From the NCBI GenBank assembly GCA_035084275.1, contig CM068757.1, positions 9,858,001 to 9,922,000 on the forward strand: DNA of 64,000 nt, written 5' to 3'. The stretch comes from Hydrolagus colliei (lineage: Eukaryota). This document shows, piece by piece, positions 1 through 59,044 of this stretch (position 1 is its first letter; each line of letters begins with the position of its first letter). The notes under the pieces were generated by a model. The model made no database searches, had not been told where the DNA came from, and saw only the letters and a list, made by a program, of their open reading frames with translations. A program made the position numbers and the translations under genes.

Positions 1-306
1 AAATAAATAAGTGCTTCAGTAATAATTATTAATAATAATAATCCTTGCATTTGATGCAACCTTTGCTTAATTTCTTATTGAAGCACATTACCTGCATTTT
101 TGTAGTGCTTTCTCCAGCTCTGTTATGGGATGTCAACCTGGACTGTGGCTTGAACCAACTATCATCCTTTCTTGGAGGACTAAGCCAGGCTGACACATAA
201 CATCTTGTTAAAGCTCAGAACAGTTTTATTCCTTCTCATTAATTGTGTCATCATGCAGTTGCTGTCAGCGAAACTTACATTGAGCATTGCTTCTGTTTCC
301 TCGCAG

Positions 307-620
307 ATGTATCTCCTATAGTGTCAGAAATCATATGCAAACCTGAACGACCCAAAATTGGTGAAATGTTAACGTTGACTTGCACGATTGATGACTTCTG
401 CCCGGGGGATATTACCATTCTTTGGAGTAGGGGATGGATGGATTTCCACAATGAACAATTTTTACAGGAACCCCGCATTGGTGCAAATGGACTTTACTCT
501 ACGTTTTCGGAGCTGAAAATTAAGATGGAGCCAGATGATGAACCAGAGGAATTTAGTTGTGAAATTCGACATGCAAAAACAAATGATGTTGTGGAGAAGT
601 TTACCAGTCTGTTGGCTTAG
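307..620 (+). CDS. Ig superfamily C1-set domain exon, apparently the last coding exon; NCR3LG1/B7-H6-like by position
   Basis: Acceptor ttctgtttcctcgcAG ends at 306 in phase 1, typical of Ig exons. Translation has C1 hallmarks: LTLTCTIDDFCPGDITILW, NGLYSTFSEL, FSCEIRH. TAG at 618-620. Upstream exons are outside the window. Confidence 0.8.
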
Positions 621-1022: not shown

Positions 1023-1943
1023 CCGTAAATCTCCGCGTATAAGGCGCACTTTTTTTCATGTCGGAAGATCTCGAAAGTTGGGGGTGCGCCCTATACGCAG
1101 GTACAAGAAATTTTGAGCCTCAGAAATGAGGAGGGGCGGCCGGCGCGCTGTCAGCCGGGGTTTGGTCAGTGTGTCCAGTGGGGGTTGGGGGGAGCGGGTG
1201 ATGGGGCTTCGGCCTCGACCGCCCGGGCAGCGGCAGCAGCAGCAAACTTCAGTGCTGAGCCTGCTGCCTGCCTTCTGCCAAACCCAGTCTGTCTCCCTCC
1301 CTCCCTCTCCTGCCTCCTTCCCTCTCCTGCCTCCCTCACTGNNNNNNNNNNNNNNNNNNNNNNNNNNNNNNNNNNNNNNNNNNNNNNNNNNNNNNNNNNN
1401 NNNNNNNNNNNNNNNNNNNNNNNNNNNNNNNNNNNNNNNNNNNNNNNNNNNNNNNNNNNNNNNNNNNNNNNNNNNNNNNNNNNNNNNNNNNNNNNNNNNN
1501 NNNNNNNNCTCTCTCTCTCTCCCTGCCTGCCTGCCTCCCTCCCTCCCTGCCTGCCTCCCTCTCTCCCTCTCTCCCTGCCTGCCTGCCTCCCTCTCTCCCT
1601 GCTTGCCTGCCTCCCGCTCTCCCTCCCTCCCTACCTGCCTCCCTCCCTCCCTCCCTCCCTGTCTGCCTGCCTCCCTCTCTCCCTCCGTGCCTGCCTGCCT
1701 CCCTCTCTCCCTCCGTGCCTGCTTGCCTGCCTCCCTCTCTCCCTCCGTGCCTGCCTGCCTGCCTCCCTCTCTCCCTCCGTGCCTGCCTGCCTCCCTCTCT
1801 CCCTACCTACCTGTCTCTCCTGCCTCCCTCCCTTCTGCCGGCAATATTATCGAAAATGCTTCCGTTTTTTTTCACCAAGAAAAGATCAAAAGTGGGGGGG
1901 TGCGCCTTATACACGAGTGCGCTTTATATGCGGGTATTTACGG
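1023..1943. mobile_element. Non-autonomous Tc1/mariner-superfamily (Tc2/pogo-like) DNA transposon
   Basis: TIRs CCGTAAATCTCCGCGTATAAGGCGCAC and GTGCGCTTTATATGCGGGTATTTACGG. TA on both sides (1021-1022, 1944-1945). Subterminal GTGCGCC(C/T)TATAC motifs. Confidence 0.8.
1255..1835. repeat. CCTG/CCCT pyrimidine-rich low-complexity repeat spanning an assembly gap (N at 1342-1508)
   Basis: Directly visible; source of the spurious P/L/S/C-rich ORFs. Confidence 0.95.
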
Positions 1944-2284
1944 TACTTTGTGAAACAGTATTGCTTATATTATTTGAAATGTTTGGGTCATTTATCACAA
2001 CTACGCGATGTATAAGAAGGTTTATATAAAAGTGGAAGGCCTTTTTTTTCAAATAACAAAAAGACATTTCTTTCAAGTAAAAGTCAAAATGCCTTACAGA
2101 TGAGATTATTTAGAAATGAAGTGAATGTTATGCAGGGAAATGGGGCAGCTAATTTGTACCTATCAAAGTCCTAACAACAATGAGATGCGTAGCCAATTCA
2201 TTTGAATGCAGGGCGGTGGGTGGGGACGCGAGTGGGGTGTGTAAATATCATCACAACTCAGATATCAAAAAGTTTTAGAACGCA

Positions 2285-4146: not shown

Positions 4147-7100
4147 TGGGATTGGAGAGAGATATTCACAGGATCTGTTGGGATGAAGAAGGCCCTTTGG
4201 CACATCCAATCTTTTCCTTCCACACCACCCAGCCAACCATTCCCCTCCTGGACAGCATCAAACTGTTTTTTAGATGAGTCCAAGGTCTCAACCATGCTTT
4301 TTGCCAACCCTTTCCTGTCATTAATAACAGTGGTCAAGATAGTTTTGCAGATTAAAATCGGTATTGAAATGTAGGGAAGTGTAAAGAATTGAAGAGGAGA
4401 GAGAACAGAATGTGGAAGACAGGAATGTGAGGAGGTTTTGTCCAAAGTGATGGCCAGTTTGTGAATTCAGAAAAAATTAGAAGCTTCAGATCAAATACTC
4501 TCTTGGGATTTGATCTGAAATCCCAAATTTCAGAGATATTCACAAGATATATCATTTTCAATCCACGACTGTTTGTGGGACACAGCTGTGCACAATTGGC
4601 TGCCCATTTCGCCCAAAAACATACAGTCAATTGACTTTACACTATATTCTGTGAAGCGCTTTGAGACGTCGATAAGATGTGAAAAGCGCAACATCAAATG
4701 TAAAGATTATTATCATTCTATATTTTTAATTTTCTGTGCCATTCACATATAGTTCCTTTATCAGCAAATGTTTCTAACCCCACCCACCTGCATGCTTAAG
4801 ATAGTGCTAAATTTCAAGAGGTAGAATGTTATATTCTCAACTGACAGTGAGGAGGTTTCATATTGAATGTTTGTTTACTCTTGGTCTTTGCCAAACTCAC
4901 CTATAACCCACACGTTGAAACTACACAACGGATCAAAAGAAAGCGACTGAATCAATCCAGTACTGAGATATGTTAGGTTATCCCTTATTTAGTATTTTAC
5001 TAAATCATTTTGGAATATAGGTCTTTAGGGATTAAAACTGCAAGCCAAAAAATATCTTCAAGCTGTACAAAATATCAAAAAGCACAATATTGTATATTTG
5101 TAAATATTTAAAATGCTTTTGTATATCTGGGACTACATTGATTTAGGTTAATATGATCTAACATTTGATGAAAAATAATGCTAATTTAATTGCATAATTA
5201 ATATATGCACCAATAATCCTGTGTAAATTGCTTTTGGAATGGGGTTCAAATACTGTTATATTTTTGTAAAATGTTTAATTGTACCTTTCTAAATAAATAT
5301 TTGGATTTCCATGTGTTGCTTGAATTGTTACTAAATTTGTGGAGAAGAACTTTTAATCTTTAAAACCATGAATATTTTCCAAAGGCTGAACGGTCCTGTG
5401 CGAAAGAGAGAACTTTTTATGGCACCTTATTCAGTAAGAATCTCAAAGGGCTTGATAGTTAGTACCTGATGTTGTGCATTTTCATCGATAAATGCAGCAG
5501 CTATTTACACCAGTGAAGTCCCACAATCAGCCCTGAGCAGAAATGAACAAATAATCTGGTCAAAGGGGGAAACTCATTTTATTTAGCTTGTATTAGGGGT
5601 AGCACTCTCAACTCGAGTCAGAAAATTGTGGGTTCAAATGAATTGTGCTTCCGCATTAGCCTACAGATACGTAGTCACGCCATTTCACAGTTACTCCTGT
5701 GAAGTGTTTTGAGATAACTGAGCCAGGAGGGTCTACAGATAACATCACAGCCAGTCTTGCTCATCGACAGGCCTTCGAAGGGTAGACAAGTCGTTGTACA
5801 GACTTTTCCCACTCACCTCTCATTAACCCTACGAGCCAAAGCCCTAAATGTTTAGGTTGATCCAAGCTGGACAAGCAGTATTGCCAGATAGTACTCTCAA
5901 TGGCTAGCTTTACATATGGTTTTAGCTGATTAGGCTTCAGTAGTACCCTGATGGACTTTCTGGAATGACCCTAGCCTTGGTTCTTGCTAAACCTCACCCT
6001 GAACCCTCCACAATTAAGTAAAGAAAATGAATCCCTCCAGGGATAGATTACATATCCCATTCCAATAAATAGCACTATAATTCCCATGTGTAGATGGGAT
6101 GGATGGAACTCTGTTTGGTTGACATCTCATTGATACTGGAGATCTGACTGTACATCAGTTATGTTTGAGGTGTAAACATAGTACAACACCACACTGGATG
6201 CTATAATGTCAAATTCCAGCAGGAGGTTTGAACACGTAACTCCCATTGATCCAGAGATCAATTTTACTAACTAACTTGTGTTATTTGCTGATTGAGATCT
6301 TGGGATATCACTATTCAAATGTAGTTTGTTGATGTTGATAAGGTAAGGCTGTTGTTCTCTAGGTATAAACAACTTGTGAACGCTTGTATTCGCTATAAAC
6401 GTTTATATAAAAAAAGTATTGATATTGCATTAGAAACAGAGTAGGATGCAATTTGCACATTGTGGGATTTCTGTGTGTATCTCATGTTGAACAAGTTGCA
6501 GGTGTCAGTGTTCGATCCACAAACACTTAACAAGCTAGAGCTGTTAGCAATCTGAACCATCTGTGGTTTGTTCTAGGAACAAAGAGGGTCTTGATATGTG
6601 TCTCATGGGGGTGTTTAAAGCTGTGCTATTTTGCAAGGATCTTCGCCACTTTGTGAACCTGATATGTAAGTGTTACCATTTACTGCACTGTTTACACTAC
6701 AATCACAACTTAGGTATCACCCACATATAAATCACATGGAAATTGCGTTTGCCTTGAATTTTGGTTACATTGCGGTTGTGGAGAAATGTATCAAATTATT
6801 TACCAAATGTATTACTCTGTATTTGCTGGTCCTGCTGTGCTTTGGGGGAGAGAGAGAGTGCATGGAAATGGAGCCTTTTTAAAAGATTTGTGACATGTAA
6901 TGGAGGATTAAACTACAGGAGTTGAAATTTGACCCCCTGAAGGGTGTGTTAGATTTTTATTGCTTTAGCTTTCTTTAATGTAGAATCATACTCAGTTCAA
7001 TAGGAGACATACACTATTGTTCCTTCCTGTATGTGTGTGTGTGCATGGCAATATCATGACAAACTCCTACCCGGGAATTTTATTGCTAAACAGTTCGCCA

Positions 7101-7790: not shown

Positions 7791-7845
7791 TTAGGCACTG
7801 CAGGAACATGTAGTTTAATAATACCGATGCTGCATAATGTGGAGC

Positions 7846-8180
7846 TCCTATGGCTCAGTGGTTAGAGCACTTGTCTTGCAAGCTGAGGAAACCAAGCTGG
7901 GGAGACCTGTGTTCGAATCCAGGCAGGTCAGGGTGAAACCTTGGGCAAGTTTCCTTACTCCACATGCCTAATAATAATCCCTCCAAAAAAAACACAATAA
8001 TAAAATTGGTCATTTCCATCCATGACTGTGTGTGGGACACTGCTGTGCGCAATTGGCTGCCGCGATTCGCCCACAAATATATACAGTCAATTCACTTTAC
8101 AGTATATTCTGTGAAGCGCTTTGGGACATTGGTAAGATGTGGAAAGCGCTATATCAAATGCAAGGATTATTATTATATTA
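7846..8180 (+). mobile_element. Full-length tRNA(Ala)-derived Deu-type SINE (representative of more than 25 copies or fragments)
   Basis: A box TGGCTCAGTGG (7851-7861), B box GTTCGAATCC (7911-7920), Deu-like core tgggacactgctgtgcgcaattggctgccgcg (8033-8064), L2-like tail ending (TTA)n. Other copies at about 9838-10233, 16430-16756, 37745-38050, 55575-55935 (+) and 10660-11050, 24690-25030, 33975-34505, 54760-55040 (-). Confidence 0.9.
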
Positions 8181-11173
8181 TCATAATACTGTAATAATAA
8201 TAACAATCTTTACATTTAATATAGAGCCTTATCACACCTTTGAGATGTCTCGAAAAGTGGTATTCAGGATATACTTTTGCCCAGAAAATATACAGGCAAT
8301 TCACTTTACTGTTTATTCTGGTAACAACAGCCAAATTGCATTTTTATGGTGCCTTTCAAGTTTGGAGGACGTGCCAAGGCGCTGGAAGCACTCAGGTACT
8401 ATATAAATGCTAGTTGTTGTTTTCTGCAAGAGGTGGTAAGGCGCTATATCAAATGCCAGGATTATTATTACTGTAAAAATGGGTAAATGTATTATGGGTG
8501 AAATATGATGTCGCTTAAATTGGATTTGGTTTGATCTGGGTTTAAAGTTGCTGTGTGGTGAAAATTGTGTTTTAACCGACTTAACCTGAAAGTATTTTTT
8601 GCACTTTTCACACCTATATTACCTATGAAGGTGGTATAGCCATGCTCTGTACTGTGTCATTTGTATTGTGACACCTTTTACCAAATGCTACTGGGCAAAA
8701 CAGAATTGTGATAGAAGTATGTGAACTTGAAAGATATTTGAATGGCTTGGAGCCAGACAGAGTGGTTGGCAAGGATGTAAAATATAAGGTTTCTCCCACA
8801 AAACATACAGTCAATTTACTTTATAGTATGTTCTGTGAAGCGCATTGAGACAGCTCAAATACATCATAAAGTGCTATATGAAATGCAAGGACTATTATTA
8901 TTTAGGTTAGAAAGTAGAAAGATGATCCTTCAACTATAGTCATCAACAATAATTTACATATGTTCATAATCCTGGAATATTTATTTTTAAAAAGTTATTA
9001 AAAAGTTATTGAAGAACAGGTCTGTTAGGTTATGGGGAGAGAGCTGGGCAGTGGGATTGAGTTGCTCTTTTCAAAGAGCCATCATAGACTAGATGGGATG
9101 AATGGCCTCGTTTTGTGCCGTATAATTCTATGAAAAGAAACGGGAAGTTAGGGGAAATTGTTTCACACAGCAAGTTGTTCAGATCTGAAATGCATTACCT
9201 GAAAGAATGGTGGAAGCTGATTTGATAATCTCTTTTAAGAGAGAAATAGATAATTATTTGGGGAGAACAAGTTTGCAGGACTATGGGGAGAGCACGGGGG
9301 AAAATGGGATTATTTTTCACTGTGGCCAGACTAATTTAAATTACATTAAGTGTGACAAATGGAAATAAGGGAAGCTGAATTCTTAAAAAGGAAGTAGACT
9401 TTACTGTACATGGATTCCAAATGTACTGTATAAGTTATTCTGTAAATGAACCAGTATTCAATTAAGCAATGGTGTCCAGTGGTAACCATTCACAGGTTAC
9501 CACTGCAAACGTGGTTGTCTAGTAATTTTTTTGCTGTTTGTTCAGTGAGGACCATTTTACTCATTAAACTTCCAGTGTTCATGCATTGTAGACTTTCAGT
9601 GTAAATGGGAGACGACTGCATAAAATACCTGCCCACCCCAAATGGCTGGTCTATCTCTTCTAAATTCACCTGACTAGTCAGCTATTAACCATGCCTTAGA
9701 ATCCTGAGCTCCAGTCTTGTTTAGGAATGGGATTATTAATTATTATTGCCAACACCACTACAATAGATCTATTGCCTGGAAGGGCTCCTGTTTTCCTCCA
9801 CCCCTCTCTGAGTATCTGTATCTATAAGTGAAGTCCTCAGGCATATTGGTTAGAGCACTTGCCTTGCAAATGAGAGGATTGGGGTTCAAATTTTGTACCG
9901 GGCGAAATGCCTAGACAAGGTTCCCAAGGTTAGACATGTTAGACATGTTCTCCGCATGTCTTTGTTTACCTAGGGGTAAGTAGAAACCCAGTAGTTAGTC
10001 GATTGGCAGATTGTTTTTCGGTGAGAAATGATTCCCTTGAAATATTAATAATTTAGTTGATTTAACTAAATTTTCAATCAACGACTGTTTGTGGGACAGT
10101 GCTGTGTGCAATTGGCTGTCAAGTTTTGTCACAAAATATCCAGTCCATCCACTGTACAGAATATACTGAAGCGCTTTGAGACGTCTTGAAGACATGAGAA
10201 GGTGCTATATCAAATGTAAGGATTATTATTATGATTGCAAACGTTGCCGTACAGGTTATGGGGAGCTCCTTAGAGCTGGCAGTGCAGGCTAAGCTTTGAC
10301 ATTAAGTGAAGCTGTTGAATTGGAATGGCAGCAGCAGGTGCCAGTGTTAAATTAGCTCAATTGCGCAGTGTGAGAGATGGTAACTATGGCAGCCTTTTAC
10401 TGCTCACAGCAATAAAATATACTGTAATACATTTTCAGGTGTGTTAAGAGTCTTTTACACAAAACTGGCTGGTGGAAGTTGAGGATGTGTGTAAAATCAT
10501 TAAGGATAGCACTGGATATAGGGCTAAAATCAACAGAAATGGTAAAAAATCGTAGAATTCATCAGTACAGAAAAAGACAATTTCTCGGTATGAGCTATAT
10601 TCAGTCTCACTCCCCTACTTTCCCTATGGATGCATTTACAAAATATTTATCTATTATTATAATAATCCTTGCATTTGATGTAGTTCCTCATGACATCTTT
10701 GAGAAATCTCTAAGTGCGTCACAGAATATAACAACAACAACTTTGATTTATATAGCGCCCTCCACGCCAGACGGCGTCTCAGAGCGCTTTGATGTCAAGC
10801 GCTATAATGTCAAGTGAATTGACTATATTAGGAGGGGTGAAACGTGGCAGCCGATTGTGCGCAGAAGTGTTACACAAACAGTTGTGGATTGAGTGACCAC
10901 ATCATTATTATTAGCCAATCGACTAACAACTGGGTTCCTATTTACTGCTGAGTAAACAGAGGCATGTGGAGTAAGAACACTTGTCTAAGGTTTCATCCTG
11001 CCCAGAAATCAAACCCAGATTCTCTTGCATATGAACCGAGTGCTTCCAATCAATACACTTCACTTTATTCCCTAATCCTGTTCACTAATTCCCTGCACAT
11101 GAAAACCTCAACACTCTTTGATTGGTACAAATTAACCAATGATAACAGTGATTGTTAATAAATAACCTGCAGT

Positions 11174-11179
11174 TTTATT
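11174..11179 (-). terminator. Candidate KCNJ11 polyadenylation signal AATAAA (second candidate at 11064-11069)
   Basis: tttatt on the plus strand, about 190 nt past the stop codon. Confidence 0.4.
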
Positions 11180-11363
11180 TGCTGACAAACAGTTAACTTA
11201 CATTACCTTTTCTGAACAGTGATCTGACATGCAGGAGATATGTTGAATTACGAGAGAGAAGCGACGGTGAGTTTGTGAACCAATTTGCACATACTCATGC
11301 GCTAGCTGTACCTCAGATCGAACGAGTGTAAGACTTCCATGTGGTTTCCATGTGTCCTGGAAG

Positions 11364-12488
11364 TCATTCAAAGATAGCCTTCTTTTTGAATGAGCCCCGT
11401 TTCGACGGCAACTCAAAGATGGGTGCCATGAGAGTGATGCCCTCCGATTCCATGCTCTGTGCGCTAATGTTCGGGGTGGGCACCTTGACTGTGTTTCCAA
11501 ACTTGGAGTAATCGACCGAGTACTTCCCGTCTTCCTCCGTCACCACCGGCACAAAGCGATGGCCCCAGAGGATCTCGTCGGACAAGTAGGAGGTCCTGGC
11601 TTGGGTGGTGATGCCCGTCGTCTCCACCACCCCCTCTAGGACCACAATGACCTCCAGCTCCTGGCGTTGGAGATCGGCGGGCTTCACCGTGTACAGGGGA
11701 CTGTCCTTGTCGATGATGTGCGAGATGACCAGCGGAGACACCAGGAAGATGCCATTGGTGTCCACCGGGTTGTCCATGCGGATGTCGATCTGGTTGAGGG
11801 GCTGGACCTCGCCTTCCTCGGTCTCGGTCTTGCAGACCACCTGCATGCGGATGCTGGCGCTGATGATCATGCTCTTCCTCAGGTCGCCCACCCTGAACAT
11901 GAAGCACAGCTGGCTGTGCCTGGGGGCGATGACGGCGTGCTTGCTGAAGATGAGGGTCTCGGCGCGCCGGTGGGCTTGCGAGGTCTTCATGAAGATGCAG
12001 CCCAGCATGATGGCGTTGATGACCAGCCCCACGATGTTCTGGACGATGAGCACGGTGATGGCGCTCGGACACTCCTCGGTGATCATGCGGCCGCCGAAGC
12101 CTATGGTCACCTGCACCTCGATGGAGAAGAGGAAGGCGGAGGTGAAGGAGTGGATGCTGGTGATGCACGGCTGGTTGCTGGACGGGCGATGGAGGTCACC
12201 GTGGGCGAAGGCGATGAGCCACCAGATCATGGCAAACAGCAGCCAACTGCACAGGAAGCTCATGGTGAACACCACCAGGGTATAGGGCCACTTGAAGTCC
12301 ACCAGGGTGGTGAAGACATCCTGGAGAAAGCGGCCCTGCTCTTGGATATTGGTGTGAGCCACATTGCAGGTGCCGTTCTTGGCTACGAAGCGAGCCTGGC
12401 GTCTCCTCTCCTTGAAGATGGGCTGGGACACGTCCTCTGCCAGACGCAGCACATACTGCTCGGGTCGGAGCGCTTTGCTGGCCAGCAT
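11364..12488 (-). CDS. KCNJ11: ATP-sensitive inward-rectifier K+ channel Kir6.2, single coding exon, 374 aa
   Basis: TIGFG selectivity filter, [15 protein letters not shown], short turret, FSKH (K185), [12 protein letters not shown] (R201), YSKFGN (G334). Intronless and directly downstream of ABCC8. Confidence 0.97.
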
Positions 12489-12642
12489 GCCTGGCCCATG
12501 CTATAGGCGGCCGGTTGAGGAGGTTGGGTTGGTGGGGCTGTGCCGTGGGTAGATGTGATGGGGGGGGGGGGAGACAGTGAGAGCTGGAGCTGTTCTGAGC
12601 TGGAGCTGGACTGACCTGTCGGTGTTACTGTTTTTAGGGGAC

Positions 12643-12666
12643 GAAGGAAGGAAGGAAGGAAGGAAG
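12643..12666. repeat. (GAAG)6 microsatellite in the KCNJ11 5' region
   Basis: Directly visible. Confidence 0.9.
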
Positions 12667-12899
12667 GACGTGCTTTTTTCCCTGTGTTGCCGAGTTCCTC
12701 TCCGATTCCAGCAGAACAGCTGCCCACGCCAGTCAGTACAGCAATCGGATATGTATGTGAGCTCAGTGAGGCAGTAGCTACAAGGCTGCAGTTAAACAGG
12801 GAAGAGGGGGGAGGGTGGCGATTGGCACAGAAGGTGTCGGGGGAGAAGGAGGGGAGATGGTTGTAGGAAGGGATTAGACAGTGTTTTGAGAGAACTGAG

Positions 12900-13330
12900 A
12901 GATGTTAATGTTCCTGGTGTGTGGGTGGGTGGGTGAGATGGATCCTGTTGTGATTTGCTGGATACTGTTTGGAGGATCCCGTCATTTGCCAGAACTGTCC
13001 ACACAATCCCCTCTCGGGAAACCTCCGACCGAACATTGCGATTTGGGAAACGGTGGATTAAATGTGGCGGAGGATGCGGGTGGGAATGGGAGTGAGACGC
13101 GCTGTCAGAGGCTGATGGACATTTTCAGAGGCTGTGGGTGGTCCTGAGTTTGGTGTGTCGTACGCGGGGCATGTTTAAAAAAAGGAATTGCCCTGGAGGG
13201 AGTGGGGGAGGGGGGGGGGTTAAACCGGGTATCCTTTGAGTTAAACTGTCTCCAAGGTGACATTCCTGGCGATGGGATATCAGAATGGAGCCTGTCCTCA
13301 GTGACGCACTCTTATCTAGTCCAGTTCCTC
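12900..13330 (-). promoter_or_regulatory. Probable KCNJ11 promoter or 5' region
   Basis: GC/CpG-enriched unique sequence with G-rich Sp/KLF-like tracts and a GATA motif (cttatct), upstream of the CDS. The TSS cannot be determined. Confidence 0.35.
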
Positions 13331-15173
13331 AGCTGAATGAATCCGCAGTAATCTAGGGCACTGCTGGTGACAGCCCAGCCTGGCTCATCGACAGGACTCC
13401 CCAAGGACAGACCAGTCACTGAGGGGGCAGGGATTGATCCCATTCAGCTCCTGTTAATCCTCCAAAGCCCTGATGTGTGGGTTGGTCCTAGATAGATGGA
13501 CAAGCAGAGGGAAAGCTTGCCGATCAGCAGTTTAAGGAATTGTCACCGCGGGAACTGAACTCAAAGGGTCCCACATCCAGAAACATTAACAACGGATTTC
13601 TACAGACGAAGGAACGCTTTGTGTATTTGTTTCAAGCTTTAGGGTGCTTAAAGTAATATGAAAACAGAATATAATGAGTAATATGCATACAACGTCTTTA
13701 ATTATCAAACAATATTTTTTTTCCGGGGAGGTTGGTAATGTTTACCTCGAATGAACTGAAGGGTCTTGTCTATACAGTATTACAGTGGGCAGGAAGTTTT
13801 CCGCATTGAGATGTAAAAATATTGCTATCAATAGCGTTTGGAATTGTGGTAAACTGAAAGTGAACTAGGATTTGTTCCCCCAAAAATGTTTTGACTTGTC
13901 CTTGTTTACTTTTAAAGGTTTCAATGTATGTATGAGCCTAGATTTGAAACTAGATCAATTTTAAAATATATATATGTGTGTGTGTTGTGTACTATATATA
14001 TTGCTAAATTCTGGAGAGTATTATGCGTAGACCGAAAAGAGCCAAGGGTTAGGGACCCCAGAGAATGTGTTGAGATACTGCTGTAGTTTAACTAGTTTAA
14101 AAGCCCTGTATCTGGCCATTGTGTACATTGACGCCTCACACTACACGACCAGCCTTACCCATTAGGGATTGAGTTTGCAGGATTAACAGGAGCTGATTGG
14201 AAATAATTCTTGCTCCCAATGCCTTTCCAAACACGGCTGGTGAGCCACGGCTTGTCCAGCAGTAATGTGAACCTGCCTGGCTCAGGAACTGTATTGACTA
14301 AGACTGCCACAGTTTGCCTCCATTCTGATAGTATCCTCCAAACATGTAACCTTGCAGCCAGATTAGCTCCATGGAGACCCTGCTGAGATTCTTCTGCCCC
14401 ACCACCCCCCACCCACCTCAGTGTTAGGCACATGGAGATCCTGAGGCACAGGTACCACAATGAGAATTGAGGCAAAATGCAAGCTTTCATTTGTGTCCAT
14501 TTTTTATCTTGTCCCATATTTCTTTATTAGTGTCAGGGGGCATTAGCGAAGTTGACCAGAGTTGTGGGATCTTGTGAACTCGTGAATAAAATGTCGTGGT
14601 CTTGGTGAAGGGAGTAATGTATTAGTGTGTATCAGGTTTTATGTGGTGATTCAACATGGAAAGTTAAGGAAATAGACCATTTGTCCCATTAGACTCCCTT
14701 GTGTGAAATCCAGGTTATTTCATTGCCTGTTATGCAAAAGTCTTGACCTTCCCTTTAATTTGTGTCCTTTTATAGACGTAACACCTCGGAGTAAAAAATT
14801 ATTTAAGCTTCTTGGCTGCAGGGAGAATGCCTTTTGTACCAAGGCTAAGCATTTCTGATTTTTGTCCCCCACCTGGTGATTTTAAGGCAATAAATAAACA
14901 CCATATCAAATGCACAAAGTTTTAAAACAAAGCTGATTTGACTTCCTTCAATGTTGTAGCCTCAATGTAACACTATCAATAATAATCCTTGCATTTGATA
15001 TAGCACCTTTTTACATGATGGTGATTCAAGGTACTTCACAAGATATACCGTAAAGTCGTTTTGACTGTGTTTTGTGGGTGAAATCAAGTGTTTTTAAAGT
15101 TTATATTGTACAGGAATGGGAGAGGGATGTCTCTTCGACAATAGGAACAGCACACAATCCTTGCAAATCTACC

Positions 15174-15179
15174 TTTATT
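15174..15179 (-). terminator. Candidate ABCC8 polyadenylation signal AATAAA
   Basis: tttatt 44 nt past the ABCC8 stop codon. Confidence 0.4.
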
Positions 15180-15222
15180 TACAAATAAGACATTAAGAGA
15201 AATTATAGCCAATATCCAGATG

Positions 15223-15360
15223 TTATTTGTCCGCACGTACAAAAGATGCAAACATTCCATCCACACATTCCAACAAAGTGTTCGGGGTGTCGTACTCCTG
15301 AATTTGTCCTCTTCTCATCACGATCACTAAATCTGCTTTCAAAATCGTGTGTACTCGATG
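15223..15360 (-). CDS. ABCC8: SUR1 exon 39 (last): [10 protein letters not shown]...FASFVRADK*
   Basis: ctcctAG acceptor, 138 nt, TAA stop. Confidence 0.95.
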
Positions 15361-17486
15361 CTAGGAGATAAAAGGCACAGGGAGCATGTTAATATCCGCA
15401 GAACAGGCAGGTTCCTTCACCGTCTGGGAGCTTTCTGTATGTGCTTTTAGTCACTGACAGCACATACACAATTTCAATTTCAGCCAAAATGCCAATCTCT
15501 GCCCCTGCTGGTGTTAAACTTAACAGTGCTGAAAAGCAAAAGTTATAGAGGTATCAGGTTAAGAAGCAAGTTATCACCCAAAACTACTTTTGTTAGTGCC
15601 AGTCAGTGTTTTAGTTGCAAGAATGAAACATGCTGTTTGTCACCCTCTTGCAAATGACATACACATCACCTCTTGAAACAGCTCTACAGATGGGACTTCA
15701 CCAGAGCTGCAAAGGTACTATCCCATGACAGCAAGTTGGCCACAGAATCATTTTCTTGAACAGTGCCCTTGTTTAGAACTAAGATCTGGTCTGCATCCAG
15801 AAGGAGGGAAACCCGAGGCTATGAAGGTAAAGGAGCAAAGATCTTTCAGTGTTGCATATCTCTGAACTGGAGTAATGAAGCATTGCCTGTGCTAGCAATA
15901 TGTCTTCTCTCAAATGTTTACCGCCCACTATTTCTCTCATTTCACTGTTATATTCATTGATTTATAGCCTGGTCTAACAACAAAATGTAGAAATATTTGC
16001 CAAAATTACAGGGAAATTTGGTCCCACAAGTTTCAGTTGTGGCAGGGAGGGAGGAGCTGGGTTTTGTGTGCAAGCAGCGATGAAGTAAATTTATACATCA
16101 TTACCTTTCAGGATCAGTAATAGAATCATTAATCTCTCCCAGTGGATGGGCTTCACAGCTGGAAGCCATTCTCTCTTACCATGTCAATCATTTTGTTCTC
16201 AATCATTCTGCAGGCAGTTGTAACACCAGTTTTACTTTTTGATTAATATCTATGTGCAATAACATTTACTTGTCCAAATTTATCAACTCCATTATTACAG
16301 CAACTACTATTACATTATCATTCAATTGAATGATTTTATTCGAAGAGAATTGACTATTTGGCAAGTTGAGGGAGTCTATTAAAATTATTATTTGGGGGGG
16401 TGGGGGTGGAAAAAAACAAAGAATTCCTGTAACTCAGTGGTTAGAGCAATTGCCATGCAAGTGAGACACCTGGGCTTGAATCCAGGCAGGGAAACAGATT
16501 GGGCAAGTTTCCACACGCCTTTGTTTTCCGAGTCGTAAATAGGAACCCGTTGACAGTCAACTGGCAGATTGCTATTTGGATATTAATCCTTCAAAAAATT
16601 GTGGTCACTCAATCCACAACTGTTTGTGGGGGACATTGCTGTGCACAATTGGCTGCCATGTTTTGCCCACAAATATACAGTATATTCTGTGAAATGCTTT
16701 GAGACATCTAGAAGATGTGATAAGGCACTATACCAAATGCAAGAATTATTATTACTCAGACCGATATTAGGACATGGGACCCTCTTATCAAACAATGGTG
16801 GATGCAGAATCTACAATAGCTTTTAAAAGGAATTAGATAAATATTAAAAGCATAAAAATGGAAGAGGGAAAGAATAGGACTAAATGGAAAGTATTTTCAG
16901 ATTGGTACAATGGACCAGATGGTCTCTTCTGCTGTAATCCAATGACTAATAATATTTTCATACTAAGTCCTGTGACAGCAGTTAAGTATTTTTCACTGGA
17001 ATCTTCAAAGGAAAACATCGCCTTAGCCATTACACCAGCAACAATATTGTGCCTGTAGTTCTCTCCGGGCCTTAGGTGCCTGCCTACATTCATTGTTAAT
17101 TTCTAATTGACTGGCAGTATATGTCCACTCTACTATTCCACCTCCAGATTACGATTCTTCATGAACTCTGATTCTGGCACTAAACATTTGGTTTAATTTC
17201 AAAATAACCATTTACTTCTCAGATTCATATTGCTAAATGAGAGAATCCAATGTCCATCCAGTTTACGTTCCACCATCCTAGTAGTTGTATGCACACGTCA
17301 TGTCCTAAATAACATACTGTATCCCACAATCTTATCAAGTTTCCAGCACCTTGGGCTATCCTCCCGACGTGAAAGGCGCTCTATAAATGTAATTTTGTTG
17401 TATTTCCTAAAATAAATTATCTCATTTGCTTTTGAAAGAATTGACAATGCATGTTTTAATGTAGCAGAAAAAAAGTTGTCACTTAC

Positions 17487-17549
17487 AGCTATTGTCACAA
17501 CCGTGCGATCAGCAAACGCTGTCATTACCACCTTCTGCAAAATATTTTC
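17487..17549 (-). CDS. ABCC8: SUR1 exon 38: ENILQKVVMTAFADRTVVTIA
   Basis: 63 nt, AG/GTAAGT. Confidence 0.95.
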
Positions 17550-18448
17550 CTGCAAGAAAAAAAAGGCTCGATCACACCTACAAAGTCCAAATCACACTAG
17601 TAGTGGAATTATTCACTGCTAGTAATAGGATGGTATAGAGGAAAGCAATGAATGTGATCCTCAGTTTTAAAGGGATTAGCAATGTGCAAATGTGCCAGTC
17701 CTAAACTGGCTCTTCAGACAAAGAGACTTCTTGAAAGAGGCGATTAAGCTGCCGAACAAAATAGAGGATGTAAACTCCCAATGAGATTTCCGGTACGAGA
17801 TAGGAAGTGCTGTTTCCACACTGAAACTCTTAACTCATGTTTCAAACTAAGGCCCCTCCAGACACAAGAAGTCTATGGCAGGGAGACAACTCGTATCGTA
17901 TACAAAGCACAACAATGATCATGTATATCATATCATCACACCTCATCAACTCAGCAAAATTGAAAGCTCTTTACACCTCTTAAATTATTCACAAGTGTGG
18001 GTTGACTGACTATTACAGGGAAATTGATCAAGGAACAATAATGCTCTGTCAGAACATCCTCCATGGTTTTTTTTGTCTAGTATTACTTATGTGCATGTGA
18101 CCACCAGGAAGGTGAACTGGGTGGACTTTGGTCTTTTTTCATCTAGCATTTCTTATGTTACTTCTTAAAACTTTTATCATTAATATCCACTCGCACACCC
18201 ATACAAAGCAGTCGCTGATTGTCAATTAGGTTCATGGGCTTAAGTTCATGGGCTTAAATTCCATTTGTCTCCACCTTGTGGACACAATGAAGAGTCAAAC
18301 TGATCCTCTTGCACTGGGACATACTTGTGCGCAGGTCATACACAATTAGTTTAATCACACAAAATATTTTCTCACCAAGTTGATTTCACAGGGCAAGAGA
18401 CACATCATGCCAGTATTGCAAAAGTTCTTCTGCTGAGCTCTAGTTTCA

Positions 18449-18679
<231 letters not shown>

Positions 18680-19519
18680 TCACTATTTATTCCTTTGACA
18701 GAACACTAACCTTCCTATTCTTTGCTAAATCCTTTCTAATGAAAAAGTTTACAACTACACAGAGGTGTGCAAGAATGCCAGAGCTTGTAAGGCATAGTTA
18801 TAACCTGGGTTAATAGAAAAGTACAGAAATGTTTGTTAAAAAATGTGGGGAAATTTGCCAAATTTGAAGAAACGTGGGGTTTGATTGGTGCTATTGAGGT
18901 ACATTTTACTGCCAACCTACAATTTTTCACTTTTCTATAAAAAGCATTTGATTTAAATTGGTCCTTTGGGCCTTTGTATATCATGTCTGTTTGCTTCATG
19001 CTCAAGTTAAATTCACTGTTTTTTATCTGCTTATTTTTAGAACAGGAGGGTACAGAGGAAAGCAATGAATGTGATCCTTAGACTCAAAGAGACTTCTCAA
19101 AGGGAATCTTCTTGAAAGAAACATACATCCAGTGCTAGTAAAAGAACACTCGGCAGTATGCATCTGTACACTTATCAACAATTTCTCCTAGCTCAACAAG
19201 GTACTCGTCTTCAACTGAATATTGCACTGAAAGTGCAGAACTTCCAACAATGTAGTGCTTCCCCAGAACTTCACTTGAGTGTCAGCTGATCTGAGTTAAC
19301 GCACTGCTTTTATGCACCAACACCATTGCCTTCTTATAAAGTCAGCAACCCATTGAGGTTGACCACAATGAAACAGTGGAGTTTATCATGTTGTATTCAA
19401 GTGGCCATAACTTTTCTTAGGAGGACTTTTACACAGTATAGGACCTACCGTAGTTAAAACATTGCATAGAGTTATTACATTTTATTTCAGGTTACCATTA
19501 TAACAATATTAACCATTAC

Positions 19520-19623
19520 CTAAACCTCCAGGTAATGCTTTCACCACGTGCTTTAGCTGTGCAATCTCCAGAGCCTCCCACAGCATGCTGTCTGTGCACT
19601 TTTTCTCTGGATCCAAATTGAAC
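19520..19623 (-). CDS. ABCC8: SUR1 exon 36: FNLDPEKKC...KALPGGL
   Basis: 104 nt, AG/GTAATG. Confidence 0.95.
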
Positions 19624-20670
19624 CTGTCACAGAAAGCACTTTTACAAAATATTCTTACTAAATCCACTTTCGACTCAGCTTATAATTTACTATATTTCAG
19701 TAATATGGGAATTGCACCTTCCAAACCACTCTAAAACTTTCACTGATGCACACAGCTGCTCACAGGCACAAGACACAGAACAATAGATTCACATTACCCA
19801 TGGAAATAGTGACAAAGGGGCAGAAGCACAAGAACATTTTGGATGAAAAAGGCACCTCAGCCCATTTGACTTAATCTTTCTCTATACTATTCTCCCATCA
19901 CAACTTAATATCCTGGTCTCAACCACCCTTTCTTACAACCTGTTCCAGTTGTTCATTACCGTCTGGGCTCCAGCACCTTGGGACATCTTCCTGATGTGAA
20001 AGGCACTATACAAAAGTAATTTTTTTGTTGTAATAGGTAAAACATTTTTTTCCTGGCATCCGCCTCAAATTTGCTCTTAGCAACCCTAAATATGGGTCCT
20101 GTTGTTCTATTGTCTTTACTTTCCAATCCCATTGACAATTTCATTCTCCTCTAGCTCAAAAGTGGAATAAATGAGGAAGTAAAATGAAATATGGAAGTGC
20201 CAGTCACAGACAAGATGTTGTATTGCCCCCTTCTATGTTAAGTGAGTGGGCGGAGGCTTGGGGTTGGTTGTAAGGGATATACAGAGGTAGTTCTAATCTA
20301 AACTTATTCCTGTGTTGCTGAGACTGATGTGGAGATGGGGTGGTGACCCATTCACATTGTCTGTACAGGGAAGGAGGATTGAGTGGTGCAGATACACATC
20401 TATACTGCAGTTACGAGGAGCACCCAGGTTTTACAAGACACTGCAGGAGTTGTACAATAAAGGCCGGAGATTGGGATACTACACTGTTAATTGGCTCCAA
20501 AACATTTCTGTGATTAAATTAATCAATAAAAAATAAATAGATAACCTATCTGAACAATGTACACTTAAAATATTCAACACTTTCAGCTGCCAGGGCTCAT
20601 ACCAACCTGCCGCCTCTTTGCCCCCCCCCCCCCCCCCCCCCCCCACTTCCCCCCAATGGACTGCCACTCA

Positions 20671-20799
<129 letters not shown>

Positions 20800-21096
20800 T
20801 CATCTTATTCAGCACTCATTTCTCTGCACTAGGGAACGGCGATATGGGATTTTTCCGGATATGGATATATCCGTTTGCTCATACCTGCTTAAACCGATCT
20901 ATCGAGTTTTTATACTGCGCATGCGCGTGCATTTAAGGTGCGCGCTCAGTCGCGGTGCGCGCGCATTGACGGTGCGTCCGCAATGACGATGCGCGCGCAG
21001 TCGCGGTGCACGTACATTTCGAAATGCGTGCTCTAGGTCCAGAAAGTTTGTAATGTTGGTGTCAAGGTCTGTTGAATTATACGATGTTGTTTGCTC

Positions 21097-21390
21097 CCTA
21101 CCTCCCCCTCCTCTCCTCTCCTTCTCTCCCTCCCTCTCTCCCCCCTCTCCTTCTCTCCCTCCCCCTCCACTCTCCCTCTCTCCTCTCCCTCTTCCCTGTC
21201 TCCTCTCCCTCCTTTCCCCCTCTCCTTTTCTCCCTCCCTCCTTTTCCTCTCTTCCTCTCTCCTTCTCTCCCTCCTTTCCCCTCGCTACTTCTCTCCCTCC
21301 TTTCCCCCTCTCATTCTCTCCCTCCCTCTCCTCTCTTCCTCTCTCCTTCTCTCCCAACTTTCCCCCTCTCCTTCTCTCGCTCCATCTCTA
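21097..21390. repeat. CT-rich low-complexity tract inside the hAT element
   Basis: Directly visible. Confidence 0.9.
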
Positions 21391-21677
21391 AACACAAAAT
21401 AGAACACACACACCAAAAACAAAATCTAGAGATTTATTCTCCTCCATTTCTTGCTTGAAAGTAGCATGTAATGTCCACGTGTAAATGAGATCTATTACAA
21501 TAGAAAAGCGAGAGACAGACAGTCTGACTGTTAGAGTTAGAAGCCAGATTATCACTGCTGTGTGTGTCTAGTCAGACACACACAGCAGTGATAATCTGGC
21601 TTCTAACTCTCTCACACACAAAAATAACACTTACAGCCACAAAATGCCACTTATTTTTATGTAGTCTGAAGTCTGAA

Positions 21678-22118
21678 TTAATGTCCTTCGCTATGTGGTT
21701 TGTACCTGGGGTCCAGTTCGTTTAGGAGTTGCTTAAACCCAAGCGTCTCAACAATCGCCATTGGCAAGCTCTCCTTTGCTATGCAAAAAGTGATAGCGTT
21801 CGTGATACTTTGCCACTTTTTGTCCCCTCTCTGGTACAATGTTCTCCTCTTAAATAAAGCAGGAATTGTTTGAGCTGCACTGGCCCCACTACCTGTCGCT
21901 TTCTCCGAAGCGCTGGTTCGACTTCCTGCTGTTGTCGACAATGATTTCGCTCTGAGGGCAGCGTGCTGGGCGGGGTGGTGCTGCTTAATGTGATGTCGCA
22001 GGTTGCTCGTGCTCGAATCAGATGTCTTAACCAAGACCTTGCAAACTGTACATCTATACACACCATTACTGACTGCATTGTTTTCAAAGTAGTCCCATAC
22101 GGGGCTTCTTTTTCCCAT
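21678..22118 (-). pseudogene. Truncated hAT transposase N-terminus (BED zinc finger plus following helical region), 146 aa
   Basis: RSPVWDYF...CTVC...TSNLRHHIKQHH, then ITNAITFCIAKESLPMAIVETLGFKQLLNELDPRY. No DDE catalytic domain. Confidence 0.9.
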
Positions 22119-23488
22119 GATGAGAAAGGTAAATTTTTAAACTACAATTTTCAGCGATGCGACTTTGTTAAGACGCCACGACTCACGTCGAGTATACACA
22201 GTAAAGTGTGCACGCGCATCGGATGTGCGCGCCCGTTAATTGTGCACGCGCACCGAATGTACGCGCATTCCATGCTCTAGATCTAGGAGGTTGCAATGCC
22301 GGCGACAAGGTAAGCTGGAAAAGATCGCATTACACTGATAATACCAACAATATTGATATATTGCCAGGAATGATATTAAAAATATATCGATGTATATTTT
22401 TAAAATCGAATCTCTCGATATAATAGTTTTTTTAGAATCACCATATCGGCATACCGATCTGAAAATCATATCGGGTTTAATCGAAAAAACGATTAATCGC
22501 CGTTACCTACTCTGCACCAGCTTCTATTAACGACAAATTGCATTTAGATAGCACCGATCATGTAAGGGTAACTCAAGAGGCTGAAACACTCAATGTACAG
22601 AACAAATGACATTTAGTTTAATTTCTTTAAAAGAAAATGACTTGCTCAATTTTCTAGTCACTTCGCTCTGCAGTAAATCCCGTGAGCCACTTTGAGATGT
22701 TTTGACAGCAAAATAAAGTGTTCTATCTAATGATTTATGAAAAAAATCAATTGAAGTGATATAAACAGCACAACAGATTTCAACTCTGAAATCCACATTT
22801 AGTTTAATTTCTTTAAAAGAAAATGACAAATTGGGTTTCCCCCTTTTTCCCCATCCAAATACTTATTTATCATCTTCTAGTCTTCACATGCAGCTTCAGC
22901 ATTCACAGAAAACGTACGAAATATGAAGTAAAGCCCCATATTGTTTCCCCTTGAATTTATTTTATATGTTTCCCTTTGGCATAGATGACAACATCACCTC
23001 ACAACCTATTAGATAGATAATAATCCTCACATTTGAATTATCCTCACAGAAATGTTTTGGAGCCAATTAATAGTGTAGTATCCCATTTGATGATGTTAAC
23101 ACATCTCAAAGTGCATCACAGAATAAATTAAGGTGAACTGACTATATATTTTGTGGGCGAAACGCAGCAACCAAATTACGCACATTAGTGTCCCACAAAC
23201 AGTTGTAGATTGAGTAACAAAATGATTATTCGTATTAAAGAAAAATCTTTTTTGAAGACGATAGAATTAAATTCCGGTTGCTTCATCATTTTAGTAAACT
23301 GGCTGCAGCAATGCACTGATAAACTGTCGGCATCTGTAACAATCCCAGGCTCCTCACTCAAAGCCCACTCATTACCATAGTCCAGATCCAAGAGAATGAC
23401 CCAGAGTCAGGAGGGTGTGATCGGTCGCTCTGTACATCACAAACTAAGTGTGGGCTATGCCCAAAGCAGCAAAATTACAATGCCGTAC

Positions 23489-46130: not shown

Positions 46131-46241
46131 CTTGATACAAACATCATCTCCTTCTGTGCTGAGTATTTGTTGCCTGGGCTGAGATTCGTAATTTTGCCAT
46201 TCCTCTCTGGTGGGCCGTTTGCGGTTAATAACTTTAAGGGG
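46131..46241 (-). CDS. ABCC8: SUR1 exon 14: PLKVINRKRP...DVCIK (RKR motif at 46215-46223)
   Basis: 111 nt, AG/GTGAAA. Confidence 0.93.
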
Positions 46242-58041: not shown

Positions 58042-59044
58042 CTGAAATTTAAATAAAATAGTTGAGAATCGCAATCTTGCTCACAATTTCACCAAGGTAA
58101 GCGACCTGTATACTGTGTATAGAACATATGCAATTTCTCAGTAATAAGCATCTAATAATAATCCCTAAAAAAAACAATAATAATTTGGTCACTTCAATCC
58201 ACGACTGTTTGTGGGACACTGCTGTGCGCAATTGGCTGCAGTGCTTCACCCACAAATGTACAGGTAATTCAATGTACAGTATATTCTGTGAAGCGCTTTG
58301 AGACATCTAGAAAGAAGATGTGAAAAAGTGCTATATCAAATGCAAGGATTATTATCATTAGCTAGAGAGAACCCAGCTCCAACTATGCCCATTTACTGCA
58401 ATAATATTGCTTTTCTGATTCAGCATTCAGTGTTGACAAGAGGCTGCAGGTAAGTAGTGGAGATGCAAAGGAACTGGAGTAAAGCCAAACTTAAACTAGT
58501 TGGGATGGTGCAATGATTTTGTGAATTGTCCTCACACACAGTTACAGCAAGGACATTGCAGCCACATGAACTGTGACAATGCAAGGCTAACAACCTTCAT
58601 TTATGAAGCTGCAGAGGTGCATTATTCACACAATGGAGGTAATTCTAGAATTACCTTCAATGGAATAGAACAGTAAACTCACCTTCTTAATATTGTGTAG
58701 ATTTGTATGGAAAAAGTTTATTTCACGTCTCAATTTTACTGGGTAATTAACTGATACCACTCAGTCTGTGTCTGATAGATTGACATGCAATGCAAAATTA
58801 CATTTGTATAGCACCTTTCACACCAAGAGGACATCCCAAAGCAAAGTACTCAGTCAAACCACCTTTTACAGTATATCCTGTGAAGTGATTTGAGATGTCC
58901 CCATGACACAATAAGGCTCTTTATCAAATGCAATGATTATTATTATTTTCCAAATCTATGAGAAAGTAATTTGTAATTCTCTCACTAGGGGTTTCTGGGG
59001 CTCACAATTCCATGCAGTCTCAGCCCATTATGGAATCATTCAGG

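What the first reader, a model, noticed from the sequence alone, without database searches (positions are those of the whole stretch)
11364..11402. Kir6.2 lacks the RKR ER-retention signal (KKK instead) and has a shortened C-terminus, while SUR1 keeps its RKR
Seen: the C-terminus reads ...[14 protein letters not shown], aligning to human ...[26 protein letters not shown]; SUR1 exon 14 keeps NRKRP. Known: Arg-based R-x-R signals hold unassembled Kir6.2 in the ER, and removing them lets Kir6.2 reach the surface without SUR. The lysines sit at -5 to -7, so this is not a canonical KKxx motif. The human RKRS PKA serine is absent, but KRGS offers a new candidate. Inference: this Kir6.2 may form SUR-independent surface channels or use different assembly quality control.
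Basis: partly seen in the sequence, partly recalled or inferred. Interest (0 to 1): 0.7.

Follow-up and report, generated by a model that had tools for sequence, protein, structure and literature searches.

The report
Chimaera Kir6.2 tail: KKK replaces RKR
[quoted passage not shown] The difference is real and rare, but its effect on trafficking is untested.

Summary
Window 11364-12488 (-) is one intronless 374-codon ORF, the KCNJ11 (Kir6.2) orthologue of a holocephalan. It is 89% identical to Callorhinchus milii KCNJ11, the locus is collinear with that species' ABCC8-KCNJ11 locus, and dN/dS is 0.19. It ends ...[18 protein letters not shown] aligns KKK368-370 with mammalian RKR369-371, and no R-x-R remains in the tail. 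Callorhinchus has ...NRGSMRRRPVSPKATFE*. The most parsimonious path is two G>A transitions (R>K) plus a 15-bp in-frame deletion (RPVSP) that brings a downstream Lys alongside. Of 164 vertebrate Kir6.2 sequences, 145 have RRR or RKR and none has KKK. Seven others also break R-x-R but stay tribasic (RKK, KKR, KRR, RRK in iguanian lizards, a lungfish, a newt, a galaxiid, a shark), so the motif is not inviolable. SUR1's NRKRP is present at 46212-46226 (-). The functional reading is only partly supported. The Arg-based consensus is lost and KKKAIFE is not a K(X)KXX signal. However, internal KKK motifs retain NMDA-receptor subunits, the tribasic cluster is always preserved, and SUR2 (RKQ) already shows a weaker natural signal in this channel family. 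The most likely outcome is a weakened pore-subunit checkpoint in a channel that still depends on SUR1. Interest is modest.

The parts
11364..12488 (-). KCNJ11 (Kir6.2) coding sequence, single exon, 374 codons plus TGA
   Evidence: ORF list. PDB Kir6.2 scores 602 bits against 555 for Kir6.1. Pfam IRK and IRK_C both match. 89% identity to Callorhinchus KCNJ11. dN/dS is 0.19.
11379..11387 (-). KKK368-370 (AAA AAG AAG), at the position of mammalian RKR369-371 and Callorhinchus RRR
11381..11382 (-). Most parsimonious junction of a 15-bp in-frame deletion relative to Callorhinchus (CGA CCC GTC TCT CCC, encoding R-P-V-S-P), lying between K369 and K370
   Evidence: A codon-wise scan of gap positions gave 11 mismatches here and 13-15 for the other placements. 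A BLOSUM global alignment places the gap at the same point.
11391..11402 (-). K363-R-G-S366, a candidate basophilic-kinase site. The Ser is ancestral; the Lys at -3 is new (Asn in Callorhinchus).
   Evidence: Phosphorylation was not tested.
11364..11378 (-). Terminal A-I-F-E plus stop, homologous to Callorhinchus A-T-F-E plus stop
12399..12407 (-). N-terminal RRR28-30, the only R-x-R left in the protein. Callorhinchus has it too, so it is not a new compensating motif.
10803..11363 (-). 3' flank (probably the 3'UTR), 85% identical to Callorhinchus, with AATAAA at 11179 and 11069
46131..46241 (-). ABCC8 (SUR1) exon that carries the RKR signal. The boundaries come from the cag| and |gtgaaa splice consensus only.
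46215..46223 (-). SUR1 R-K-R codons (CGC AAA CGG) within NRKRP
14449..23036 (-). 3' part of ABCC8, collinear with the Callorhinchus ABCC8 3' region, lying head-to-tail upstream of KCNJ11

Best explanation
Shown: this is the functional, selectively constrained KCNJ11 (Kir6.2) orthologue of a holocephalan other than Callorhinchus milii. It sits in the conserved ABCC8-KCNJ11 tandem. After the split from the Callorhinchus lineage its disordered distal tail was remodelled. Two Arg codons became Lys by single G>A transitions (AGA>AAA, AGG>AAG). A 15-bp in-frame deletion then removed the third Arg together with P-V-S-P and brought a downstream Lys alongside, giving K-K-K. No R-x-R remains in the tail.

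Inferred: the Arg-based signal on the pore subunit, which is read by the beta/delta-COP site of COPI, is lost or much weakened. ER quality control of the channel then rests mainly on the intact RKR of SUR1 and on Kir6.2's other dependence on SUR1 for efficient biogenesis and gating. The physiological channel most likely remains a Kir6.2/SUR1 octamer. At most there would be a small leak of low-activity Kir6.2-only or under-assembled channels, not a new SUR-free channel type.
For: Identity and orthology:
- PDB Kir6.2 scores above Kir6.1.
- All 120 listed hits of the first search that carry a specific source name are named KCNJ11 or KCNJ11-like, with Callorhinchus best at 89%.
- Pfam IRK and IRK_C both match.
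- The window is collinear with the Callorhinchus ABCC8-KCNJ11 locus from 23036 down to 127.

Constraint: dN/dS is 0.19 overall and 0.41 in the last 29 codons.

Mutational path: DNA and codon alignments.

Ancestral state: 145 of 164 vertebrate sequences have RRR or RKR, including sharks, rays, bony fishes and tetrapods, and none has KKK.

No compensating R-x-R was found. SUR1's RKR is retained.

Literature:
- Removing RKR or truncating the C-terminus lets Kir6.2 reach the surface without SUR1.
- R-based signals and K(X)KXX signals use distinct COPI sites.
- K(X)KXX needs its lysines at the extreme C-terminus, and KKKAIFE does not fit.
- From memory: Zerangue et al. 1999 reported that Lys cannot replace the Arg residues of RKR.
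Against: - Internal KKK motifs are reported ER-retention signals in GluN1 and GluN2A.
- Every full-length orthologue keeps three basic residues or an R-x-R at this site. Both changes here are conservative R>K and the deletion restores a third basic residue. This could mean selection on a tribasic signal that still works.
- I could not retrieve the primary data on K-for-R substitution.
Confidence: 0.5

Rival explanations
1. The signal is conserved in another chemical form. The KKK cluster is still a working ER-retention or retrieval element (a tribasic signal), so assembly control is unchanged and the difference is functionally silent.
For: Internal KKK motifs act as ER-retention signals in the NMDA-receptor subunits GluN1 (C1 cassette) and GluN2A. 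Every full-length Kir6.2 examined keeps a tribasic cluster or an R-x-R here, including the seven that break R-x-R (RKK, KKR, KRR, RRK). Both substitutions are charge-conserving, and the deletion restores a third basic residue.
Against: R-based signals are recognised by a COPI site distinct from the one that reads di-lysine signals. Arg is kept at the flanking positions in about 96% of orthologues, which argues that Arg matters and not just charge. From memory, Lys did not substitute for Arg in the original Kir6.2 mutagenesis (Zerangue 1999). R>K by a G>A transition is also among the commonest neutral changes.
Confidence: 0.3
2. The Kir6.2 forms physiologically relevant SUR-independent surface channels, or the lineage uses a different assembly quality-control logic.
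For: There is no R-x-R in the tail and no canonical K(X)KXX. Mammalian Kir6.2 without RKR reaches the surface and conducts without SUR1.
Against: SUR1 sits next door with its RKR exon conserved and its 3' part collinear with Callorhinchus. Kir6.2 is under strong purifying selection along its whole length, including the regions that contact SUR1. From established knowledge of Kir6.2 C-terminal truncations, Kir6.2-only channels have low open probability and lack Mg-nucleotide activation. From memory, zebrafish Kir6.3 lacks RKR but still needs SUR1 to traffic (Zhang 2006).
Confidence: 0.12
3. Artefact or non-representative sequence. This could be an assembly error, a private allele of the sequenced individual, or an unrecognised splice that gives the mature protein another C-terminus.
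For: The KKK codons contain an A5 homopolymer. The exact protein is not on record elsewhere. No second holocephalan of this lineage could be compared.
Against: The frame matches Callorhinchus both before and after the changed segment, and the stop codon is at the homologous position. A 15-bp in-frame deletion plus two transitions is not a typical assembly error. The Callorhinchus gene model is also a single exon ending at the same stop.
Confidence: 0.05

Closest known systems
Mammalian Kir6.2 (KCNJ11) with the C-terminal RKR369-371 Arg-based ER retention/retrieval signal
   Same: It is the orthologous gene. It has the same domains (IRK, IRK_C), the TIGFGG filter, an aligned ATP/PIP2-site region, an intronless CDS and an adjacent ABCC8. 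The tribasic cluster sits at the same aligned position.
   Different: All three basic residues are Lys, so there is no R-x-R. The Ser after the motif (mammalian S372) is Ala. The protein ends 4 residues after the cluster instead of 19.
Callorhinchus milii KCNJ11 (P0001), the nearest sequenced relative
   Same: 89% amino-acid and 91% CDS identity. The terminal A-x-F-E-stop, the short tail and the locus are the same.
   Different: Callorhinchus keeps RRR followed by PVSPK. The window has K-K, then the RPVSP deletion, then K. There is also a separate 4-residue deletion in the extracellular turret.
Other vertebrate Kir6.2 with a naturally broken R-x-R: Anolis sagrei and Sceloporus undulatus (RKK), Phrynosoma platyrhinos and Protopterus annectens (KKR), Lissotriton helveticus and Aplochiton taeniatus (KRR), Cetorhinus maximus (RRK)
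   Same: The site stays tribasic but no longer fits R-x-R.
   Different: Each keeps at least one Arg, and Cetorhinus has a second RRR further on. The window is the only all-lysine case among 164 sequences.
Zebrafish Kir6.3 (kcnj11l) and SUR2 (RKQ): KATP subunits with an absent or weaker Arg-based signal
   Same: Both are natural KATP subunits that depart from RKR. SUR2's RKQ is described as less potent. Kir6.3's existence is confirmed. That it lacks RKR and still needs SUR1 is from memory of Zhang et al. 2006.
   Different: Kir6.3 is a teleost paralogue with no adjacent SUR gene. Here the change is in the Kir6.2 orthologue itself, next to SUR1.
Internal KKK ER-retention motifs of NMDA-receptor subunits GluN1 (C1 cassette) and GluN2A
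   Same: Three consecutive lysines lie in a cytosolic C-terminal tail of a multimeric channel subunit, away from the K(X)KXX position.
   Different: The protein family is unrelated and the recognition machinery is not established. Function here is untested.

Membership tests
Kir6.2 / KCNJ11 | Inward-rectifier fold: IRK transmembrane domain plus IRK_C cytoplasmic domain | tested here: met
   Pfam PF01007 at 195 bits and PF17655 at 220 bits.
Kir6.2 / KCNJ11 | Closer to Kir6.2 than to Kir6.1 or other Kir subfamilies | tested here: met
   PDB Kir6.2 scores 602 bits, Kir6.1 555 and Kir3.2 388. Among the 120 best database hits, every one with a specific source name is KCNJ11 or KCNJ11-like.
Kir6.2 / KCNJ11 | Head-to-tail synteny with ABCC8 (SUR1) | tested here: met
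   A SUR1 exon lies at 46131-46241 (-). The window is collinear with the Callorhinchus ABCC8-KCNJ11 locus.
Kir6.2 / KCNJ11 | K+ selectivity filter and conserved ATP/PIP2 contact regions | tested here: met
   [28 protein letters not shown] and SKFGNT are all conserved in the alignment to solved Kir6.2. This is sequence level only.
Kir6.2 / KCNJ11 | Distal C-terminal R-K/R-R signal | tested here: not met
   KKK368-370 aligns to RKR369-371. No R-x-R is left in the tail.
Arg-based (R-x-R) ER retention/retrieval signal | Sequence consensus with Arg at positions 1 and 3 (R-x-R, ideally preceded by a hydrophobic, aromatic or Arg residue) | tested here: not met
   F-K-K-K has no Arg.
Arg-based (R-x-R) ER retention/retrieval signal | Binding to the beta/delta-COP site of COPI and retention of a reporter | not testable with these tools
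   This needs pull-down and reporter assays.
C-terminal di-lysine signal K(X)KXX | Lys at -3 and at -4 or -5 from the free C-terminus | tested here: not met
   The lysines are at -5, -6 and -7, and -3 is Ile.
Internal KKK retention motif (GluN1/GluN2A type) | Three consecutive Lys in a cytosolic tail | tested here: met
   KKK368-370. The motif is described.
Internal KKK retention motif (GluN1/GluN2A type) | Demonstrated ER retention that depends on those lysines | not testable with these tools
   This needs surface-expression assays.
SUR1 / ABCC8 Arg-based signal | RKR in the cytoplasmic linker before NBD1 (mammalian residues about 648-650) | tested here: met
   NRKRP at 46212-46226 (-) aligns with PLKVVNRKRPAREE of solved SUR1 chains, E about 0.04-0.05 for a 45-residue query.

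The most novel reading that the evidence does not exclude
This is a natural vertebrate Kir6.2 orthologue that has fully lost its own ER-retention checkpoint. It would reach the plasma membrane without SUR1, or in sub-stoichiometric complexes, while SUR1 stays retained by its own RKR. That would make it a natural counterpart of the laboratory Kir6.2 C-terminal truncations and a case of relaxed stoichiometry control in a KATP channel.
Probability: 0.12. Interest if true: 0.55.

Novelty: new variant of a known kind. Interest (0 to 1): 0.3.

Why it matters
RKR in Kir6.2 is the founding example of Arg-based ER retention signals and of trafficking coupled to assembly. An orthologue with an all-lysine cluster is a ready-made natural experiment. 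So is the series found here in other vertebrates (RKK, KKR, KRR, RRK). Together they can test whether Arg identity or only a tribasic charge cluster is needed, and whether the pore-subunit checkpoint is dispensable when SUR1 keeps its own. The practical consequence is small: one heterologous-expression experiment settles it. The physiology of the animal probably still depends on Kir6.2/SUR1 octamers.

Tried and rejected
1. I looked for the same protein in other assemblies or transcriptomes to get cDNA-like support. It is not on record.
2. I searched the protein database with the tail alone (residues 318-374) to find other holocephalans. Only Callorhinchus came back, so the change cannot be dated within Holocephali.
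3. MAFFT's default DNA alignment put the gap at the stop codon and aligned KKK to RRR with many mismatches. A codon-wise scan of gap positions gave a more parsimonious placement.
4. My first regex census of R-x-R was contaminated by upstream 'ARFRL/RYR' matches and by failed anchors. I redid it.
5. I tried to retrieve primary or review statements on Lys-for-Arg substitution in RKR and the Kir6.3 paper. They are not held, and the text searches were unproductive. Those two points are therefore marked as memory.
6. A compensating new R-x-R elsewhere in the protein: none.
7. A canonical KKXX/KXKXX reading of KKKAIFE: rejected on position.
8. Structure prediction was not attempted. The distal tail is short and unresolved in the solved channels, so a model would not bear on the question.

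Full report
**What is at the coordinates.** On the minus strand, window 11364-12488 is a single uninterrupted ORF of 374 codons. It ends ...[19 protein letters not shown] followed by TGA. The three lysines are residues 368-370 (AAA AAG AAG, 11379-11387) and lie at positions -5 to -7 from the C-terminus.

**What the gene is.**
- Against all solved structures, the best matches are Kir6.2 chains (about 600 bits, aligned over residues 1-372), ahead of Kir6.1 (555 bits) and Kir3/Kir2 (below 390 bits).
- Pfam finds the IRK and IRK_C domains.
- In the large protein collection, every one of the 120 best hits that carries a specific source name is annotated KCNJ11 or KCNJ11-like. The closest by far is Callorhinchus milii at 89% identity; everything else is 79% or lower.
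- The Callorhinchus locus (L001) is collinear with the window from about 23036 down to 127, through the 3' part of ABCC8, KCNJ11 and an Ig-domain neighbour. Identity is 70-85% even in non-coding DNA.
- The window therefore comes from a holocephalan (chimaera) other than C. milii, and the ORF is the KCNJ11 orthologue in the conserved ABCC8-KCNJ11 tandem.
- It is not a decaying copy. dN/dS against Callorhinchus is 0.19 overall (dS 0.26), 0.155 over codons 1-345 and 0.41 over the last 29 codons.

**The motif.**
- HMMER aligns '[11 protein letters not shown]' with '[11 protein letters not shown]' of rodent and human Kir6.2, so KKK sits on RKR369-371.
- A scan of the whole protein finds only one R-x-R, the N-terminal RRR28-30. 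Callorhinchus has it too, so it is not a compensating novelty.
- KKKAIFE does not fit K(X)KXX, which needs lysines at -3 and at -4 or -5 (motif definition).
- The Ser that follows RKR in mammals is Ala here and Pro in Callorhinchus.
- The Ser of 'RGS' is widespread: Callorhinchus has NRGS, and many bony fishes have PRGS or HRGS. Only the Lys three residues before it is new.

**How the tail arose.**
- Callorhinchus ends ...ELLSNRGSMRRRPVSPKATFE*.
- At the DNA level the window reads TCA TTC AAA AAG AAG GCT ATC TTT GAA TGA. Callorhinchus reads TCG ATG AGA AGG CGA CCC GTC TCT CCC AAG GCG ACC TTC GAA TGA.
- I scanned every codon position for the 5-codon gap. The minimum, 11 mismatches, is F-K-K-[deleted R-P-V-S-P]-K-A-I-F-E. 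Aligning KKK directly on RRR costs 14. A BLOSUM global alignment places the gap at the same point.
- The likely history is therefore two G>A transitions (AGA>AAA, AGG>AAG) plus a 15-bp in-frame deletion that removed the third Arg and brought the Lys of 'PK-ATFE' alongside. The margin of 2-3 mismatches is not decisive.
- The frame matches Callorhinchus on both sides of the changed segment, and the stop is at the homologous TTY GAA TGA. A homopolymer frameshift in the A5 run is therefore unlikely.
- Of the 9-residue length difference from Callorhinchus, 5 residues are in the tail. The other 4 are a separate deletion in the extracellular turret after residue 106.
- Most of the shortening relative to human is shared with Callorhinchus.

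**How unusual it is.** I tabulated the cluster in 164 vertebrate Kir6.2 sequences from two searches, covering sharks, rays, ray-finned fishes, coelacanth, lungfish, amphibians, reptiles, birds and mammals.

| Motif at the site | Count | Notes |
|---|---|---|
| RRR | 79 | |
| RKR | 66 | |
| Other R-x-R (RHR, RTR, RMR, RIR) | 5 | One further sequence, KRRIR, contains RIR |
| Truncated or alternative gene models | 6 | Not informative |
| Tribasic but R-x-R broken | 7 | See below |
| KKK | 0 | The window is the only all-lysine case |

The seven that break R-x-R are RKK in Anolis sagrei and Sceloporus undulatus, KKR in Phrynosoma platyrhinos and Protopterus annectens, KRR in Lissotriton helveticus and Aplochiton taeniatus, and RRK in Cetorhinus maximus. 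Cetorhinus has another RRR downstream. The ancestral state is clearly R-[RK]-R. The window is therefore an extreme of variation that exists elsewhere, not a unique break with a universal rule. The exact protein is not recorded in any other assembly, and no second holocephalan of this lineage could be found. The change cannot be dated or shown to be fixed.

**SUR1.** The minus strand at 46212-46226 encodes NRKRP within an exon bounded by cag| and |gtgaaa, about 46131-46241. The peptide aligns with 'PLKVVNRKRPAREE' of solved SUR1 chains at residues 640-679. The E-value is only 0.04-0.05 because the query is 45 residues, but the synteny makes the assignment secure. SUR1 keeps its RKR. I did not verify the exon number.

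**What it probably means.**
- Established background: C-terminal truncation or RKR>AAA lets mammalian Kir6.2 reach the surface without SUR1. RKR in both subunits is thought to be masked on assembly, and COPI and 14-3-3 read the signal.
- R-based signals bind a beta/delta-COP site that is distinct from the alpha/beta'-COP WD40 site used by K(X)KXX.
- On that basis, a tail with no Arg and no terminal di-lysine should have lost the classical signal.
- My recollection that Zerangue et al. 1999 found Lys unable to replace Arg points the same way. I could not retrieve that text, so it stays a lead.

**Points against a dramatic consequence.**
- Internal KKK motifs are reported ER-retention signals in GluN1 and GluN2A.
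- The site stays tribasic in every full-length orthologue. Here both substitutions conserve charge and the deletion restores a third basic residue. This is what selection on a basic cluster would produce, although G>A transitions are also common neutral changes.
- KATP subunits with weaker or absent signals already exist. SUR2 has RKQ. Zebrafish Kir6.3 exists and, from memory of Zhang et al. 2006, lacks RKR but still needs SUR1 for trafficking.
- SUR1 lies next door, its RKR exon and collinear 3' part are conserved, and Kir6.2 is under strong constraint throughout.

**Verdict.**
- Best reading (0.5): the pore-subunit checkpoint is lost or weakened in a channel that still works as a Kir6.2/SUR1 octamer. 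Quality control rests mainly on SUR1's RKR.
- Rival (0.3): KKK still retains.
- Rival (0.12): physiologically meaningful SUR-free channels.
- Rival (0.05): artefact, private allele or alternative splice.
- The sequence observation is solid. The functional inference is plausible, untested and already has partial precedents.
- I file it as a new variant of a known kind with modest interest (0.3). One reporter or surface-expression experiment would settle it.

Noticed in passing
window, many sites, e.g. 4552-4727, 7828-8184, 10070-10236, 37742-38054, 58151-58363, 59042-59355, 63905-64000: An interspersed repeat of about 150-330 nt occurs in more than 25 copies on both strands of the window. The same element recurs in the Callorhinchus locus L001 at 70-87% identity. 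It looks like a SINE-type element common to holocephalans.
   Followed up: no
window 10803-11363 (-): The 3' flank of KCNJ11 is 85% identical to Callorhinchus over about 550 aligned bases, not far below the CDS at 91%. AATAAA occurs at 11179 and 11069. It is probably a conserved 3'UTR. I found no evidence that it codes.
   Followed up: partly
window 12170-12171 (-), between residues Q106 and P107: There is a 4-residue deletion in the extracellular turret loop relative to Callorhinchus (HSKPSDQSAPVPC against HRPSSNQPC). It is unrelated to the tail change.
   Followed up: no
window 243-620 (+): This open frame encodes an immunoglobulin C1-set domain (Pfam PF07654, 39 bits). It is collinear with the end of the 941-residue Ig-domain gene that lies downstream of KCNJ11 in Callorhinchus (L001 20611-21152, 83% identity). 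It is the conserved neighbour gene.
   Followed up: partly
window 1113-2015, around the N run 1342-1508: GC-rich, low-complexity repetitive sequence flanks the masked or gap stretch. The frames read as repeated 'LPPSLPACLPLSL'.
   Followed up: no
window 12001-14000: This interval has the highest G+C (0.51) and the most positive GC skew (+0.24) of the window, immediately upstream of the KCNJ11 start. It may be a CpG-rich promoter region between ABCC8 and KCNJ11.
   Followed up: no
related proteins P0126, P0150, P0157, P0163, P0046, P0087, P0044: Annotated Kir6.2 of Anolis sagrei and Sceloporus undulatus (RKK), Phrynosoma platyrhinos and Protopterus annectens (KKR), Lissotriton helveticus and Aplochiton taeniatus (KRR) and Cetorhinus maximus (RRK) also lack a strict R-x-R at the retention site. 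The three iguanian lizards suggest a clade-level change.
   Followed up: partly
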